Assembly: GCA_965655095.1 (NCBI GenBank)
Contig: OZ296653.1
Coordinates: forward strand, 71,734,001 to 71,798,000
Source of the DNA: Haplodiscus bocki
Lineage: Eukaryota
Length of the DNA stretch: 64,000 bases
Reading direction: 5' to 3'
Shown: in pieces, positions 1,811 to 6,339 of the stretch
Layout of the letters: every line of letters begins with the position of its first letter
How positions within the stretch are numbered: position 1 is the stretch's first letter
Translations under genes and position numbers: made by a program
The notes under the pieces: generated by a model
The model's database searches: none
What the model was told of the DNA's origin: nothing
The model's input: only the letters and a program-made list of their open reading frames with translations

Positions 1811-2540
1811 AATTTGGTGATCAAAAATTTTCAGAGACTGAAACGTCGAACATTGGACACTTTCACATCGGGCACCATCAATTGGCAAGTAAGCGTAAAA
1901 AAATCATTTGCTTTGAGTGGGTGATTGATTTTCCTCGCATATTACAATTGTGGCTGAAAATACTAAAGTTGGTTTTTCATCTCGAGTCTTTTGGGGGGAA
2001 AGGCATTCCCCATTGACGAGGAACCAATGAGATACACCATATATTGGCTTCATCCGTTCTAAGTTAGGGGAGAACGGGAGTTTTTTCTTTTTGACGAATT
2101 GATCAATCCTCTTGCTCAAACTATGTATGAAACAAATCAACTTGAAAAAGGGAAAGAAAAGGCATATTTAAAAGGGGTATCACAACAATTAAGCTATAGC
2201 AATTTCCTCATTTTGTAGTGCTTTTGTGAAGTTTAACCTCAACGTTTGCGAATCCACGAGTGGTAGCAGCTGAAACGCATCTTTGATGAGTACGTTATCG
2301 TTCTAATAAGTACGTAATTCATCAAGCACCAATATTTTCACGTGGTATTATGTTTTATTGGCTTTCGACGTTTTCAGCTCTATTACTGCCATTTCTTAGT
2401 ATATTGGGATTTCATTGGAATTACAGATAGGACTGTCTGATCGGACCAATTTTTTTAAGTAAAATTAGTTCGTCACAAAATTGGTAGTTCCAGCCACCAA
2501 ACTTATTACCTGATTAGTTCATTACAATTCACGATCTTAA

Positions 2541-2555
2541 TCGCTCTTATTTCAG
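2541..2555 (+). promoter_or_regulatory. 3' splice acceptor (cis or trans) 10 nt upstream of the zinc-finger start codon
   Basis: TCGCTCTTATTTCAG|G ends at 2555: a pyrimidine tract plus TTTCAG. A candidate donor AA|GTAAGC lies at 1889. Confidence 0.6.
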
Positions 2556-2565
2556 GGTGTTTGTA

Positions 2566-5500
2566 ATGGATGAATTAGATGATCTGATTTCTTTGGTTAA
2601 CGACGACAGTTCTTCCGAGAAATCTGGCGAGAAAAGGGAGAGACTCGCTTCCAATGAAGTGTTTCAAGGGGATCTGTTGTCTCAAATTCTCGATAACAAG
2701 AATCTAACCGCCGAAACTAAACTGGAATATATAATGGATGAGCTGCAGAACAATAGTTTCGGTTGCAGTGATCAAGATATAAACATAGCGCTGCAGCGGA
2801 AAGGCTGGAACAACCTGAAAGTTGATGACATCAAGCGTGAATGTAAGCATATAGCGCGGTCAATGAAAGACATGTCTGAAGAATGGTACCAGTGCTCCTT
2901 ATGTGAACAGAGTTATCCTGCTGATAAGTATCATTGTACATCTTGCGGAGAAGAGTTTGTGAATTTGTTGGATCTTCAAATTCATGTGTCAGAGTTTCAC
3001 GTTTCGATAGGCGGTAAAGATGAACAGGTGTGTAATTCGTGTGGGATTAACTTTGGAACCAGTAAGAAAAGTCTTCAGAAACATATGTATGAGAAGCACA
3101 TATGTTCACAAGGACACGTTGAGTGCCCAGTGGGATGTAAAGTGCTCATACCTGCCGAAAGTGAAAATTCAATCAAAGTATCTCGACACATATCTAGTAA
3201 ACATGTATGTGAATTTTGTGGTGAAAAAACTTTGTTTTTATATCGGCATTTTGTCGTCTTTCATGCTATGCGTGATGATGATGTATCCAGCCAAGGATCT
3301 ATTACTGGCCGACATGATACACCAGGCTCAAAAGCTGTCTCTGTTGCCAAAGAAGAAATGAAAGCTTTGCATCCCGTTAGAAATATGTCTCATGACACCT
3401 TTCAAGCTCGTCAAAAAGACGAAAATAACGACCATGTTGTCTGTAATTTTTGTCGTTTGTCGACTCCCCTCAATGGATTTTCCTGCCCAGTCTGTTCTGA
3501 GAACTTTGATTATTATGCGGATTCACTCGTGCATTTAGTAAATGATCACCAGTACTCGATAGATTCAGAAATTGGATGCGAAATTTGTCAGAAGCCTCTT
3601 CTCTTGCACGAGTTGAAAGGTCATATCCAGCGTCAACATTTTTGTTATAGCTCACATCTGAGATGTCCTAGAAATTGTTTGGTTCTTTTTGGAAATGAGA
3701 CTGATGTAATGAATCATCTTCAAGTGGAACATAATTCGGTGCCTCTTGTACGGGCACCTCCCGTCGTTCAAGCTCCTATAGTTAACAAGCTTAAAAACGC
3801 TGGGATTCTCGAAACTCCTCATTCTCCTGGAGCGTTACTTCCTCAAAAGTTAAGCGAAGTATTTTTCGCCAAATCCAATTCATTGAACAACATGAACCAT
3901 TTGCAAGCACGTGAGATGTGGACTCCGAAAAACCCACTTATTGAAGGAAAGCCATATCAAATGCAAAGCTTGCCTGTTTTAAATAGTGCTATCATCCAGA
4001 TCGACACCACAAGTTTTAAACACACTGGCAATATTAAGTCATTCGCAGAATGGGAAGAGTGGATAGAAGAAAACGGACCTGTGAGCCTTGGACTTCCCGG
4101 GTATATGGTTTATTTATCGCCTCTGCCAAGACAGATTGACCCTAAACGAAGCAATAAAGCAGAAGATAGTATGGAATGTTCCGTCTGTCGATTTAAATAC
4201 CCAAAACAGTTACTCGAATGCAATTTGTGTAACATGCGTTTTTGTACTAAAGGCAGTTTCTATTTCCATAATGAAACAATGCATAGCATTGTTGGGGAAA
4301 ATATGATTTGTAGTTGCTGTCAAAAGCCGTGGCCATCTGTAAATGTGATGATGTCTCATGAATTGTACAATGCGTGTAAACTGCATTTCGAATGCCCATT
4401 TAATTGCAATGACTTGCTCAATAGTAAAAAGGGATTACAGGAACACTTGCTTAGTGAGCACAAAGCAGTGGCTGCTCCCAACACATCGAATATGTTGCCC
4501 TTCGGACTGTCAACGTATGGGAAAAGTATCGGAATCTCTGGTGTCCCTTGCCTTAAGTGTGGACTAGTTTGTTACAAAAAAGAGCGCTGGTCTCAATGCA
4601 CTTTGTGTGACAAGCATAAAACACCTATAGTATACACGTTTGTTAATGGGCTCGAGTTTTTGACCCATTTGTGTCGTCACCATAAGTTGAAACTGCCAAT
4701 TTATCTGACTTGTCCCTCTTGCGGAATGATCTCCCCCAATGTAGGTCAATTCCAAAGACATCAACTGAGCATGCATGGCTATTGTTCATTCCATCAACCT
4801 TGCTCAAATAAGCAATGTAATGTTATTTTTCCAAATGGAAGTGATTTAATGAAGAATCATGTCAGTAAGTGTGAGTTCAATAAGAGAAAGGTGAAAGCAA
4901 CTCCCACTCACCCGCAAGGTAGTACGCAGCCATCCACAATTGAGCCCTTTTCAATGACTAAACCGAATGTAGAGAAAGAGGTGCTTATCAAGGCTTCAGT
5001 CTCTGCAAACTCAACAACACAACGTGGGGTTTTACCCCTGCCAATTCAATCAACAGTTGCGCCCAAACAGCAGAATGCCAATACAAGTTATCCAATAGCG
5101 AATTTTCCGAGTTTAGAATCTTTGCCAGTTATGCAAAACATGAAGGACCCAGTCCAATTGTACAGAAAATCAGTGTCGAATTCTTCAGCAAATTCTTTTG
5201 CAAGAACAATTTTGAATCATCCTACAAATGTGAACCCACCGTTGTCTTCCGTCGAATTAGGAAACGAAGCTCTACTATCTCAGGCATATCAACCAGTTCT
5301 TGAGTTTGAGGAAAACCCAAACGCAATGACTTACGATTTGCAAACCAATTCAGATATGGAAATAGAAGATGTGGATGTCACTCCTGCAAAAGGTCCTCCA
5401 AAGGGGGAAGCTCCATCTTCAGTTGATCTGAGGAAAACAAGCTGTAGAAATTGTTACTTCGGTTACCATCCAGAGAAGCTGTCACGTGAACATTACTGCC

Positions 5501-6339
5501 TTGATTGCAACTTGAATTTCCACAGAGTTTTTGACCTACACTTTCACTTAATGTTAGCCCATCAACAAGAGGTGAACGTATCAAATAAATACTACTGCGA
5601 ACTTTGCGGTGAAAGGACAAAGCGATTCGATACGTCTGATCTTTTATCACATCGTGTGGAACAGCATGGCATTTGCCTGGTGCACGTGATGTGCTCGAAT
5701 TCGGGCTGTGAGACATTGTGGGGTGACATAAAGGACATGAAAAAGCACAGTGAAGGTAGTTGTCCTTACAAGTCCGCCAACAACCTTCAAACTACTAACT
5801 CCAGTCTTCCTCGCAAGAGACAGAAACCACCCACTGAACTAACGTTACAAACTCCCTCCGCAAAAAGGAGGAGTCACGCAGGTCAACTAGTTGCATTCAG
5901 AGAAACCCAAAACCTGTTCATAACCCATAACATTAAGGAAGATAACTTTCCAGGTTGTGACGACTGTGGGAAAGTGAAACCTTCCACGAAGTTATATGAA
6001 TGTAGACTCTGCAACAAAGAAGTTCGAAGGTCTGAAAAACAGTTTCTTTTATACCTAGAAGCTCTAATGCATCTTATTGAAGACCACGGATTCGAGGTAA
6101 CTGGCGCAAAAAAGATGTGCCAGAATAGCGGGTGTTTAGACAATGCAGGAATGGCGCTTGAGTTCATAAAAATTGAAGATTACTACAAACATGGAGTTGA
6201 AAAGCATAAAGTCTGTCCGAGACACTTTGTTTGCCCAAGAGGCTGCCTGGCTGTGTTCAATAATACCAAAAAGGTTGGTATTCATGTATCGAAGTGTCAA
6301 TTCTCAAAGTCAAAGAAGAAAGAACAGACAAGCTTTTAA
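2566..6339 (+). CDS. Multi-C2H2 zinc-finger protein, 1257 aa, six repeated three-finger modules; likely a nuclear nucleic-acid-binding protein
   Basis: Uninterrupted 3.77-kb ORF. ATG at 2566 is in GTAATGG context (the ORF track's GTG 2557 start is unlikely in a eukaryote). About 19 C-x2/4-C...H-x3/4-H(C) fingers in six clusters, separated by low-complexity P/S/T/N/Q linkers. Basic NLS-like stretches PRKRQK...AKRR and KSKKK; TAA stop. An upstream coding exon cannot be excluded. Confidence 0.92.
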   Translation: MDELDDLISLVNDDSSSEKSGEKRERLASNEVFQGDLLSQILDNKNLTAETKLEYIMDELQNNSFGCSDQDINIALQRKGWNNLKVDDIKRECKHIARSMKDMSEEWYQCSLCEQSYPADKYHCTSCGEEFVNLLDLQIHVSEFHVSIGGKDEQVCNSCGINFGTSKKSLQKHMYEKHICSQGHVECPVGCKVLIPAESENSIKVSRHISSKHVCEFCGEKTLFLYRHFVVFHAMRDDDVSSQGSITGRHDTPGSKAVSVAKEEMKALHPVRNMSHDTFQARQKDENNDHVVCNFCRLSTPLNGFSCPVCSENFDYYADSLVHLVNDHQYSIDSEIGCEICQKPLLLHELKGHIQRQHFCYSSHLRCPRNCLVLFGNETDVMNHLQVEHNSVPLVRAPPVVQAPIVNKLKNAGILETPHSPGALLPQKLSEVFFAKSNSLNNMNHLQAREMWTPKNPLIEGKPYQMQSLPVLNSAIIQIDTTSFKHTGNIKSFAEWEEWIEENGPVSLGLPGYMVYLSPLPRQIDPKRSNKAEDSMECSVCRFKYPKQLLECNLCNMRFCTKGSFYFHNETMHSIVGENMICSCCQKPWPSVNVMMSHELYNACKLHFECPFNCNDLLNSKKGLQEHLLSEHKAVAAPNTSNMLPFGLSTYGKSIGISGVPCLKCGLVCYKKERWSQCTLCDKHKTPIVYTFVNGLEFLTHLCRHHKLKLPIYLTCPSCGMISPNVGQFQRHQLSMHGYCSFHQPCSNKQCNVIFPNGSDLMKNHVSKCEFNKRKVKATPTHPQGSTQPSTIEPFSMTKPNVEKEVLIKASVSANSTTQRGVLPLPIQSTVAPKQQNANTSYPIANFPSLESLPVMQNMKDPVQLYRKSVSNSSANSFARTILNHPTNVNPPLSSVELGNEALLSQAYQPVLEFEENPNAMTYDLQTNSDMEIEDVDVTPAKGPPKGEAPSSVDLRKTSCRNCYFGYHPEKLSREHYCLDCNLNFHRVFDLHFHLMLAHQQEVNVSNKYYCELCGERTKRFDTSDLLSHRVEQHGICLVHVMCSNSGCETLWGDIKDMKKHSEGSCPYKSANNLQTTNSSLPRKRQKPPTELTLQTPSAKRRSHAGQLVAFRETQNLFITHNIKEDNFPGCDDCGKVKPSTKLYECRLCNKEVRRSEKQFLLYLEALMHLIEDHGFEVTGAKKMCQNSGCLDNAGMALEFIKIEDYYKHGVEKHKVCPRHFVCPRGCLAVFNNTKKVGIHVSKCQFSKSKKKEQTSF

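What the first reader, a model, noticed from the sequence alone, without database searches (positions are those of the whole stretch)
2893..6297. Zinc-finger protein built from six copies of an unusual 'clasped' module: CxxC-[C2H2]-[C2H2]-Cx2-3H-[C2H2/C2HC]
Seen: modules at about 2893-3204, 3442-3732, 4177-4461, 4549-4872, 5443-5763 and 5956-6297. Each starts with an orphan CxxC (CSLC, CNFC, CSVC, CLKC, CRNC, CDDC) followed by two C2H2-type fingers. Next comes an orphan C-x2/3-H (CSQGH, CYSSH, CKLH, CSFH, CLVH, CPRH), two residues before a third finger with C-x3/4-C (CPVGC, CPRNC, CPFNC, CSNKQC, CSNSGC, CPRGC). The last three modules end in C2HC. There are no TGEKP linkers. Inference: the orphan CxxC and CxxH could jointly bind a fourth Zn (C3H), closing two fingers into a loop and forming a compact 4-Zn domain rather than a classical DNA-tracking array. 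I do not recognise this as a named domain.
Basis: partly seen in the sequence, partly recalled or inferred. Interest (0 to 1): 0.75.

Follow-up and report, generated by a model that had tools for sequence, protein, structure and literature searches.

The report
Zinc-stapled three-finger module, acoel-type family
An intronless 1,257-residue gene encodes six copies of a three-zinc-finger unit that carries four extra, strictly conserved zinc-binding residues, most likely forming a fourth "staple" zinc site; this layout matches no catalogued domain or solved structure and turned up only in a small family whose sole named source is the acoel worm Symsagittifera roscoffensis.

Summary
Window 2566-6339 (+) is one ORF (P0001, 1,257 aa). 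It holds six about 105-120-aa modules: CxxC knuckle, C2H2, C2H2, C-x2/3-H, then a C2H2 or C2HC finger.

The reading of a fourth Cys3His "staple" zinc is supported indirectly:
- All ligands are invariant in three orthologues that share 31-41% identity, against about 21% invariance for other module positions.
- A module profile picks out 17 protein clusters among 1.84 billion. In their 114 modules the knuckle Cys and the orphan His are kept in 111-113.
- Three natural modules lack finger 3 yet keep the knuckle and C-x2-H.
- One module lost the knuckle and the orphan His together.
- AlphaFold2 predicts one compact unit (pLDDT 92, pTM 0.83).

Pfam and PDB match only single fingers or finger pairs, and no solved structure matches the whole arrangement. 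I could not measure the ligand distances, because no model coordinates are returned.

The only named family members are "uncharacterized" proteins of the acoel Symsagittifera roscoffensis. This argues that the genome is an acoel, not the coral suggested in earlier notes. Function is unknown. I found no RNA evidence.

Verdict: a new variant of the C2H2 kind, of moderate interest.

The parts
2566..6339 (+). Single-exon ORF for P0001 (1,257 aa plus stop). This is the whole protein.
   Evidence: The orthologues P0002 and P0003 start at the same Met and are also uninterrupted ORFs.
2677..2865 (+). N-terminal helical region shared by the whole family. It carries the motif L-[TS]-[AS]-E-x-[KR]-[IL]...W, with W81 invariant. 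It has no known relative.
   Evidence: Alignment A4 of 14 family members. A profile search of the PDB gave only designed helical repeats at E 1e-3 or weaker.
2878..3213 (+). Module 1 (aa 105-216). Knuckle C110/C113; ZF1 C124,C127,H140,H145; ZF2 C156,C159,H173,H178; orphan pair C180/H184; ZF3 C187,C191,H208,H213.
3208..3264 (+). Extra short C2H2 finger abutting module 1 (C215,C218,H228,H233). It is also kept in module 1 of the long paralogues.
   Evidence: P0005, P0006 and P0010 show the same H-x-C-x2-C...H-x4-H after their module 1.
3427..3741 (+). Module 2 (aa 288-392). Knuckle C293/C296; orphan pair C360/H364; ZF3 C367,C371,H384,H389.
4036..4131 (+). Conserved non-finger motif KSFAEWEEWI..NGPVSLGLPGY.VYL.P..R (aa 491-522), lying between modules 2 and 3.
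   Evidence: Invariant columns K491-R522 in alignment A1.
4162..4473 (+). Module 3 (aa 533-636), a variant. Knuckle C538/C541. ZF2 lacks its second His (C582,C584,C585,H598, then C604-x2-H607). ZF3 C610,C614,H627,H632.
   Evidence: The same CxCC / H-x5-C-x2-H variant occurs in the equivalent module of P0002, P0003, P0021 and P0048.
4534..4881 (+). Module 4 (aa 657-772). Knuckle C662/C665; orphan pair C740/H743; ZF3 is C2HC (C746,C751,H765,C769).
5428..5772 (+). Module 5 (aa 955-1069). Knuckle C960/C963; orphan pair C1037/H1040; ZF3 is C2HC (C1043,C1048,H1061,C1066). This is the module modelled with AlphaFold2.
   Evidence: pLDDT 92.1, pTM 0.83.
5941..6306 (+). Module 6 (aa 1126-1247). Knuckle C1131/C1134; orphan pair C1217/H1220; ZF3 is C2HC (C1223,C1227,H1240,C1244).

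Best explanation
The window encodes one member of a small, lineage-restricted family of intronless multi-zinc proteins. Each of its six modules is a self-contained globular unit.

Three beta-beta-alpha C2H2-type fingers are held in a fixed mutual orientation by a fourth, structural zinc. Its ligands are the two Cys of an N-terminal beta-hairpin knuckle and the Cys and His in the 8-residue linker between fingers 2 and 3. This is a Cys3His (C2CH) 'staple' that encloses fingers 1 and 2 in a loop.

Because the linker that normally lets fingers wrap around the DNA major groove is used as a metal ligand segment, the modules cannot track DNA like a TGEKP-linked array. They are separated by 20-180-residue poorly conserved linkers. 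They most likely act as independent rigid recognition beads for protein or structured nucleic-acid partners in the nucleus.

Shown: the pattern, its conservation, the family, the compact high-confidence model, and the lack of any catalogued match. Inferred: the staple's ligand set and any function.
For: Ligand bookkeeping gives 16 conserved ligands per module, which is 3 canonical fingers plus exactly one C,C,C,H set.

Conservation in orthologues: all ligands are invariant in three orthologues, while only 15-27% of the other module positions are.

Conservation in the wider family: a profile of the 18 modules, searched against 1.84 billion representative proteins, ranks P0001-P0003 and 14 further clusters (17 in all) with 4-10 full-length modules each among generic polydactyl zinc-finger proteins. 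In their 114 modules the counts are:
- knuckle C6: 111/114
- knuckle C9: 113/114
- orphan His: 113/114
- an orphan Cys and orphan His in the canonical register in 98 of 114; the orphan-His-x2-Cys spacing is x2 in all 98.

Natural experiments: three two-finger modules lack finger 3 and keep the knuckle and C-x2-H. One module lost the knuckle Cys and the orphan His together.

AlphaFold2:
- Module 5 has pLDDT 92.1 and pTM 0.83. The knuckle forms a beta-hairpin and the linker block has pLDDT 96.
- The natural two-finger module has pTM 0.71, and its order ends right after C-x2-H.

Not an extended array: Foldseek gives TM 0.22-0.31 to DNA-bound arrays, and VIA-align gives Z of 3.5 or less.

Against classical DNA binding: no TGEKP linker, and modules 1-3 have net charges of -5, -6 and -1.
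Against: No coordinates were available, so the distances between C960, C963, C1037 and H1040 were never measured. AlphaFold2 carries no zinc.

Five or six of the 114 modules have no orphan Cys within four residues of the orphan His. The module-3 type has a rearranged ligand set.

The co-loss evidence is a single evolutionary event. The 114 modules come from only about 4-5 species and include many orthologues, so they are not independent.

No RNA run holds the gene, so expression is unproven. Modules 4 and 6 are basic (+8 and +4), so nucleic-acid binding by some modules is not excluded.
Confidence: 0.7

Rival explanations
1. The knuckle and the linker Cys/His do not share a metal within one module. 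The knuckle is a vestigial half-finger, and the half-sites either bind zinc between modules or between molecules (a zinc-hook-like dimerisation) or are not metal ligands at all.
For: No distance was measured. Five or six modules have no orphan Cys within four residues of the orphan His. Half-sites that pair across chains are known elsewhere (own knowledge, for example the Rad50 zinc hook).
Against: A vestigial element would not be kept in 111-113 of 114 modules and in three orthologues at 31% identity. Knuckles and C-x-H pairs occur in equal numbers in every protein. AlphaFold2 folds a single module alone with pTM 0.83 and high confidence at both half-sites.
Confidence: 0.12
2. An alternative pairing: C-x3-H-x2-C-x3-C forms a local CHCC knuckle site, and the N-terminal CxxC pairs with the final H-x3/4-H/C of 'finger 3'.
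For: The four ligands C-x2/3-H-x2-C-x3/4-C lie within 12 residues, which is a plausible local cluster.
Against: Three natural modules have no finger 3 at all, but keep the N-terminal knuckle and C-x2-H. AlphaFold2 builds finger 3 as a normal hairpin plus helix. A PDB profile search aligns fingers 1-3 with three consecutive CTCF fingers.
Confidence: 0.05
3. This is functionally an ordinary sequence-specific DNA-binding polydactyl zinc-finger transcription factor. The extra Cys/His are a lineage quirk with no effect on binding mode.
For: The profile of the module aligns with CTCF, ZFP568 and TFIIIA arrays at E 1e-13 to 1e-17. Modules 4 and 6 are basic.
Against: There are no TGEKP linkers and H-x4-H spacing predominates. 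Modules 1-3 are acidic. The predicted arrangement is compact and differs from DNA-bound arrays (rmsd 11-19 A). Only three fingers occur per unit, separated by long linkers.
Confidence: 0.1

Closest known systems
Classical C2H2 zinc-finger arrays (for example CTCF ZF7-9, ZFP568, TFIIIA; Pfam clan of PF00096/PF13894)
   Same: Fingers 1-3 have the C-x2-4-C-x12-H-x3-5-H pattern, the F/L core and a predicted beta-beta-alpha fold. The module profile aligns with three consecutive CTCF fingers at E 1.4e-17. The finger-2 to finger-3 linker has about the classical length.
   Different: There is no TGEKP linker. An extra N-terminal CxxC knuckle and a Cys/His pair inside the linker are both nearly invariant. 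The predicted structure is compact and fixed (pTM 0.83) and does not superpose on DNA-bound arrays (TM 0.22-0.28). The whole protein reaches no Pfam cut-off.
zf-Di19 double finger (PF05605; Di19, KCMF1)
   Same: Two C2H2 fingers with H-x4-H and an 8-9-residue non-TGEKP linker. Seven of the 18 modules match weakly. Module 1 of P0003 scores 28.6 bits against a cut-off of 27.5, over fingers 2-3. KCMF1 (9jni) is a weak PDB sequence hit at E 0.41.
   Different: Di19 covers only two fingers and, as far as I recall, has no ligands in its linker and no N-terminal knuckle (from memory, not checked here). Most modules fall below its cut-off.
THAP domain (C2CH zinc site; from own knowledge)
   Same: One zinc is bound by a CxxC knuckle and a distant C-x2-H, with a folded insert between them. 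This is the same ligand chemistry and the same 'long-range' logic as the proposed staple.
   Different: The THAP spacing is 35-53 residues with a beta-alpha-beta insert and an AVPTIF box. Here the insert is 66-90 residues and consists of two complete zinc fingers. There is no Pfam THAP hit. This is an analogy, not homology.
Packed C2H2 finger pairs or triplets (Zap1 zf1-zf2, AEBP2)
   Same: These are C2H2 fingers that pack on each other instead of tracking DNA. Finger 1 of module 1 matches Pfam Zap1_zf1 at 29-33 bits against a cut-off of 27.2. AEBP2 (5y0u) appears among the weak structural rows.
   Different: In those proteins the packing is by hydrophobic contacts, without an additional metal site (own knowledge). 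The match here covers a single 22-residue finger. The AEBP2 alignment has Z 2.1 and rmsd 5.0 A.

Membership tests
C2H2 zinc finger (PF00096/PF13894 clan) | C-x2-4-C-x12-H-x3-5-H ligand pattern with a hydrophobic core | tested here: met
   Seventeen of the 18 fingers in P0001 fit the pattern; the second finger of module 3 deviates. Twelve of the 18 modules hit zf-C2H2 or zf-C2H2_4, best E 8e-7. PDB profile hits to CTCF and similar arrays.
C2H2 zinc finger (PF00096/PF13894 clan) | beta-beta-alpha fold of each finger | tested here: met
   DSSP on the AlphaFold2 model shows a hairpin plus helix three times. Single fingers superpose on ADR1 and ZFAT fingers at rmsd 2-4 A.
Classical DNA-tracking polydactyl array | Conserved TGEKP-type linkers and an extended arrangement that wraps around DNA | tested here: not met
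   No TGEKP-like linker. Compact model with pTM 0.83. TM 0.22-0.28 and rmsd 11-19 A to DNA-bound arrays.
zf-Di19 (PF05605) | Score above the Pfam gathering cut-off (27.5 bits) over the two-finger model | tested here: inconclusive
   Whole protein scores 16 bits. One orthologue's module 1 reaches 28.6 bits and the others 16-20 bits. The model never covers the knuckle.
THAP (C2CH) | C-x2-4-C-x35-53-C-x2-H spacing, AVPTIF box and a Pfam match | tested here: not met
   The spacing here is 66-90 residues and there is no THAP hit in Pfam scans.
TRAF-type zinc finger (PF02176) | Pfam match or fold match over the finger-3 C-x3-4-C...H-x3-4-C region | tested here: not met
   No zf-TRAF row in the Pfam rows listed, of which only the first 25 of 80 families are shown. 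The only trace is an Atlas row at TM 0.37.
Proposed 'stapled' four-zinc module (this family) | N-terminal CxxC knuckle plus C-x2/3-H two residues before finger 3, both conserved | tested here: met
   All six modules of P0001 carry both. In 114 family modules the knuckle Cys and the orphan His are kept in 111-113.
Proposed 'stapled' four-zinc module (this family) | The four orphan ligands converge on one zinc, giving four Zn per module | not testable with these tools
   Structure prediction returns no coordinates and no metal. Only indirect support is available.

The most novel reading that the evidence does not exclude
The module is a new four-zinc fold in which a C2CH staple encloses two complete C2H2 fingers. 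The staple is a labile, regulatory site. Its occupancy (zinc or redox state) would switch each module between a locked globular reader and an open, nucleic-acid-tracking three-finger array. This would give an acoel-restricted, intronless, fast-evolving family of switchable chromatin or RNA binders.
Probability: 0.1. Interest if true: 0.8.

Novelty: new variant of a known kind. Interest (0 to 1): 0.5.

Why it matters
C2H2 fingers are the most abundant metazoan nucleic-acid-binding fold. They are almost always treated as independent beads joined by flexible linkers.

A module in which the inter-finger linker itself becomes a metal ligand, locked to an upstream knuckle, would be a distinct architectural solution. 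It would be a nested zinc site enclosing two whole fingers, and it would change how such arrays are predicted to bind. The search tools used here filed these proteins as nothing (Pfam-dark) or as generic zinc fingers.

It also marks a gene family that so far has a name only in Xenacoelomorpha, a phylum with very little functional annotation. It offers a clean, cheap test: zinc stoichiometry of a 115-residue domain.

Tried and rejected
- Pfam on the whole protein and on five long paralogues: nothing above cut-off.
- PDB sequence search with the protein: only weak single-finger or finger-pair hits (SALL4 at E 0.009, KCMF1 at E 0.41).
- Foldseek (PDB), VIA-align wide and ESM-Atlas shape searches with both models: only single fingers or generic arrays.
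- ESM Atlas feature search: generic small C2H2 clusters.
- N-terminal domain profile against the PDB: only designed helical repeats.
- A second Atlas call failed because the protein was too long.
- Sequencing-run search: four DNA runs of one study and no RNA run, so expression and splicing could not be checked.
- Literature searches (Symsagittifera + zinc finger; C2CH/C2H2/knuckle/linker) found no description of this module.
- I looked for model coordinates in the sandbox; none are stored.
- TRAF-type and THAP membership were considered and rejected.
- A transposon origin was considered. P0001 is single-copy in the collection, I saw no transposase or reverse-transcriptase domain in it, and the LINE fragment near P0003 is only a neighbour.
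Full report
**What is there**

The first 10 kb of the window hold one long ORF, 2557 (GTG) / 2566 (ATG) to 6339 on the + strand. Its translation has 65 Cys, and 62 of them lie in six blocks.

Every quoted tetrapeptide or pentapeptide is present. There is no TGEKP-like linker. A whole-module pattern never matched in 5,000 shuffles of the protein. Cys+His make up 16.2% of module residues and 2.7% of the rest.

Three details need amending:
- The second finger of module 3 has only one His. It carries a CxCC knuckle followed by H-x5-C-x2-H.
- Module 1 is followed directly by a fifth, short C2H2 finger.
- The orphan C-x2/3-H lies in an 8-residue linker between fingers 2 and 3, about the length of a classical H-TGEKPYK-C linker.

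**Conservation in orthologues**

A word-based search of 5.8 billion proteins found only two relatives, P0002 (41% identity) and P0003 (31%). Both are uninterrupted ORFs on long ENA contigs.

In the three-way alignment every ligand is invariant, including both orphan half-sites. Only 15-27% of the other positions inside the modules are invariant, and 3-18% of the inter-module linker positions. The six modules are 22-25% identical to each other.

**A wider family**

I searched a profile of the 18 modules against 1.84 billion representative proteins. It ranked P0001-P0003 and 14 further clusters among generic polydactyl zinc-finger proteins:
- These 14 clusters are 956-2,460 aa long.
- Each holds 4-10 full-length modules.
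- All other hits listed look like generic polydactyl C2H2 proteins, matching only profile positions 14-105; I read six of them.

A local hmmsearch extracted 114 modules from the 17 proteins. Conservation in these modules:
- knuckle Cys: 111 and 113 of 114
- orphan His: 113 of 114
- an orphan Cys and orphan His in the canonical register in 98 of 114
- the spacing orphan-His-x2-Cys(finger 3): x2 in all 98 of those modules

**Natural experiments**

Three modules (P0005:1245-1327, P0006:1186-1263, P0008:1649-1726) have no third finger, but keep the knuckle, fingers 1-2 and C-x2-H. In them the knuckle and C-x2-H are the conserved ligands left over once fingers 1 and 2 are filled (each also carries a few non-conserved extra Cys/His), so the two half-sites most simply pair with each other. 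This also rules out the alternative pairing of a local C-H-C-C knuckle plus a long-range CxxC...H-x4-H site.

In one orthologous module lineage the orphan Cys is lost in four proteins. In one of these (P0010:1025-1134) both knuckle Cys and the orphan His are gone as well. This is a single event, but it is in the direction expected for one shared site.

**Structure prediction**

AlphaFold2 on module 5, using the 18-module alignment, gave mean pLDDT 92.1 and pTM 0.83. The model has:
- a beta-hairpin around the knuckle
- three hairpin-helix fingers
- pLDDT 96 over the linker block

The natural two-finger module gave pLDDT 84 and pTM 0.71. Its confidence collapses just after C-x2-H.

Such pTM values indicate a fixed inter-finger geometry. 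DNA-bound arrays superpose only at TM 0.22-0.31 with rmsd 7-19 A. VIA-align against 48,161 chains gave Z of 3.5 or less, all from single fingers or finger pairs. The ESM Atlas shape search gave TM of 0.39 or less.

The tools return no coordinates. The decisive distance measurement between the four orphan ligands could therefore not be made. This remains the main gap.

**Comparison with known families**

On the whole protein no Pfam family reaches its cut-off. The long paralogues are Pfam-dark too.

Scanned alone, modules hit single-finger or two-finger models of the C2H2 clan:
- Zap1_zf1 at 29-33 bits on one finger
- zf-Di19 at 28.6 bits on fingers 2-3 of one orthologue
- zf-C2H2 and zf-C2H2_4 at E down to 8e-7

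None of these covers the knuckle or the whole module.

The PDB profile search aligns fingers 1-3 with three consecutive fingers of CTCF at E 1.4e-17, starting at profile position 16, which is after the knuckle.

So the fingers are bona fide C2H2 relatives, and the stapled arrangement is the new part. The closest analogy in metal chemistry is the THAP C2CH site, which pairs a CxxC with a distant C-x2-H. Its spacing, its insert and its Pfam model do not match.

**Likely mechanism and function**

The best-supported reading is a structural Cys3His zinc. It ties the N-terminal knuckle to the finger-2 to finger-3 linker and turns three fingers into one rigid four-zinc body (five-zinc in module 1).

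Several features argue against the classical DNA-wrapping mode and for independent recognition beads:
- the use of the linker as a ligand segment
- the H-x4-H spacing
- net acidic modules 1-3 (-5, -6, -1)
- long poorly conserved spacers between modules

Modules 4 and 6 are basic (+8, +4). Long paralogues carry RS-rich tails. A nuclear role that involves nucleic acids therefore stays open.

The family also shares an N-terminal helical region with no known relative. In the P0001 type there is a conserved FAEWEEW...GPVSLGLPGY motif. The biological function is unknown, and no RNA run holds the gene.

**Source organism**

The only names attached to any family member are 'uncharacterized protein LOC...' of Symsagittifera roscoffensis, an acoel (XP_063710966, XP_063718350, XP_063718018).

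The evidence linking this window to an acoel:
- P0003 and P0048 lie in an ENA assembly, ERZ25071366. That assembly also holds at least one protein at 90% identity or more to a S. roscoffensis protein, apparently on the same 574,982-bp contig as P0003.
- P0008 is the 49%-identical counterpart of S. roscoffensis P0006. It lies in the same assembly as this window, ERZ26859043.

Earlier notes of this scan call the genome a probable stony coral. No coral protein appeared among the named members that were looked up. I therefore think an acoel, or an acoel-containing sample, is more likely. I did not verify this with marker genes.

**Verdict**

The module is a new variant of the C2H2 kind. It defines a small, unannotated, lineage-restricted, apparently intronless family. 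Interest is moderate, and it would rise if the four-zinc stoichiometry and a function were shown.

Noticed in passing
window 12800-64000: From about 14 kb to the end the composition is strikingly uniform (GC 0.37-0.39, AT skew about -0.15). This fits the 1.67-kb higher-order satellite described in earlier notes. Tandem Repeats Finder reports nothing because its period limit is 500. The zinc-finger gene therefore lies about 6-8 kb from the edge of a satellite array of at least 50 kb.
   Followed up: no
window 2540-2566: The sequence just upstream of the ATG reads ...CTCTTATTTCAG|GGTGTTTGTAATG, a polypyrimidine tract plus CAG. It could be the splice acceptor of a 5'-UTR intron. I found no AATAAA or ATTAAA within 860 bases after the stop codon.
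   Followed up: partly
L001, L002/L003, L005-L010 (family loci): Eight of the ten family members I looked up by exact sequence (P0002, P0003, P0007, P0008, P0009, P0012, P0021, P0048; 956-2,460 aa) are called as one uninterrupted ORF on their contig; P0005 and P0006 were not looked up. Earlier notes describe eight-exon genes in this genome. The family appears to be intronless in its coding part.
   Followed up: partly
whole genome / assembly ERZ26859043: The organism label is in conflict. Earlier notes say it is probably a stony coral. The only named relatives of this gene family are from the acoel Symsagittifera roscoffensis, and a close counterpart of an S. roscoffensis paralogue (P0008) lies in the same assembly as this window. 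Its contig has 32x coverage against 68x for the window's contig.
   Followed up: partly
P0005, P0006, P0008, P0009, P0010, P0012 (C-terminal regions): The long paralogues share a C-terminal motif, W-[DE]-D-[MV]-M-[AST]-N-[MI]...(Y)-TD-[EQ]-L, inside an acidic tail. P0006 and P0008 also carry long Arg/Ser-rich stretches, and P0017 and P0032 shorter ones. P0001 has neither.
   Followed up: no
L002/L003 1780-2643: A LINE-type endonuclease fragment (Exo_endo_phos_2) lies about 2.4 kb upstream of the orthologue P0003. It is probably an unrelated neighbour.
   Followed up: no
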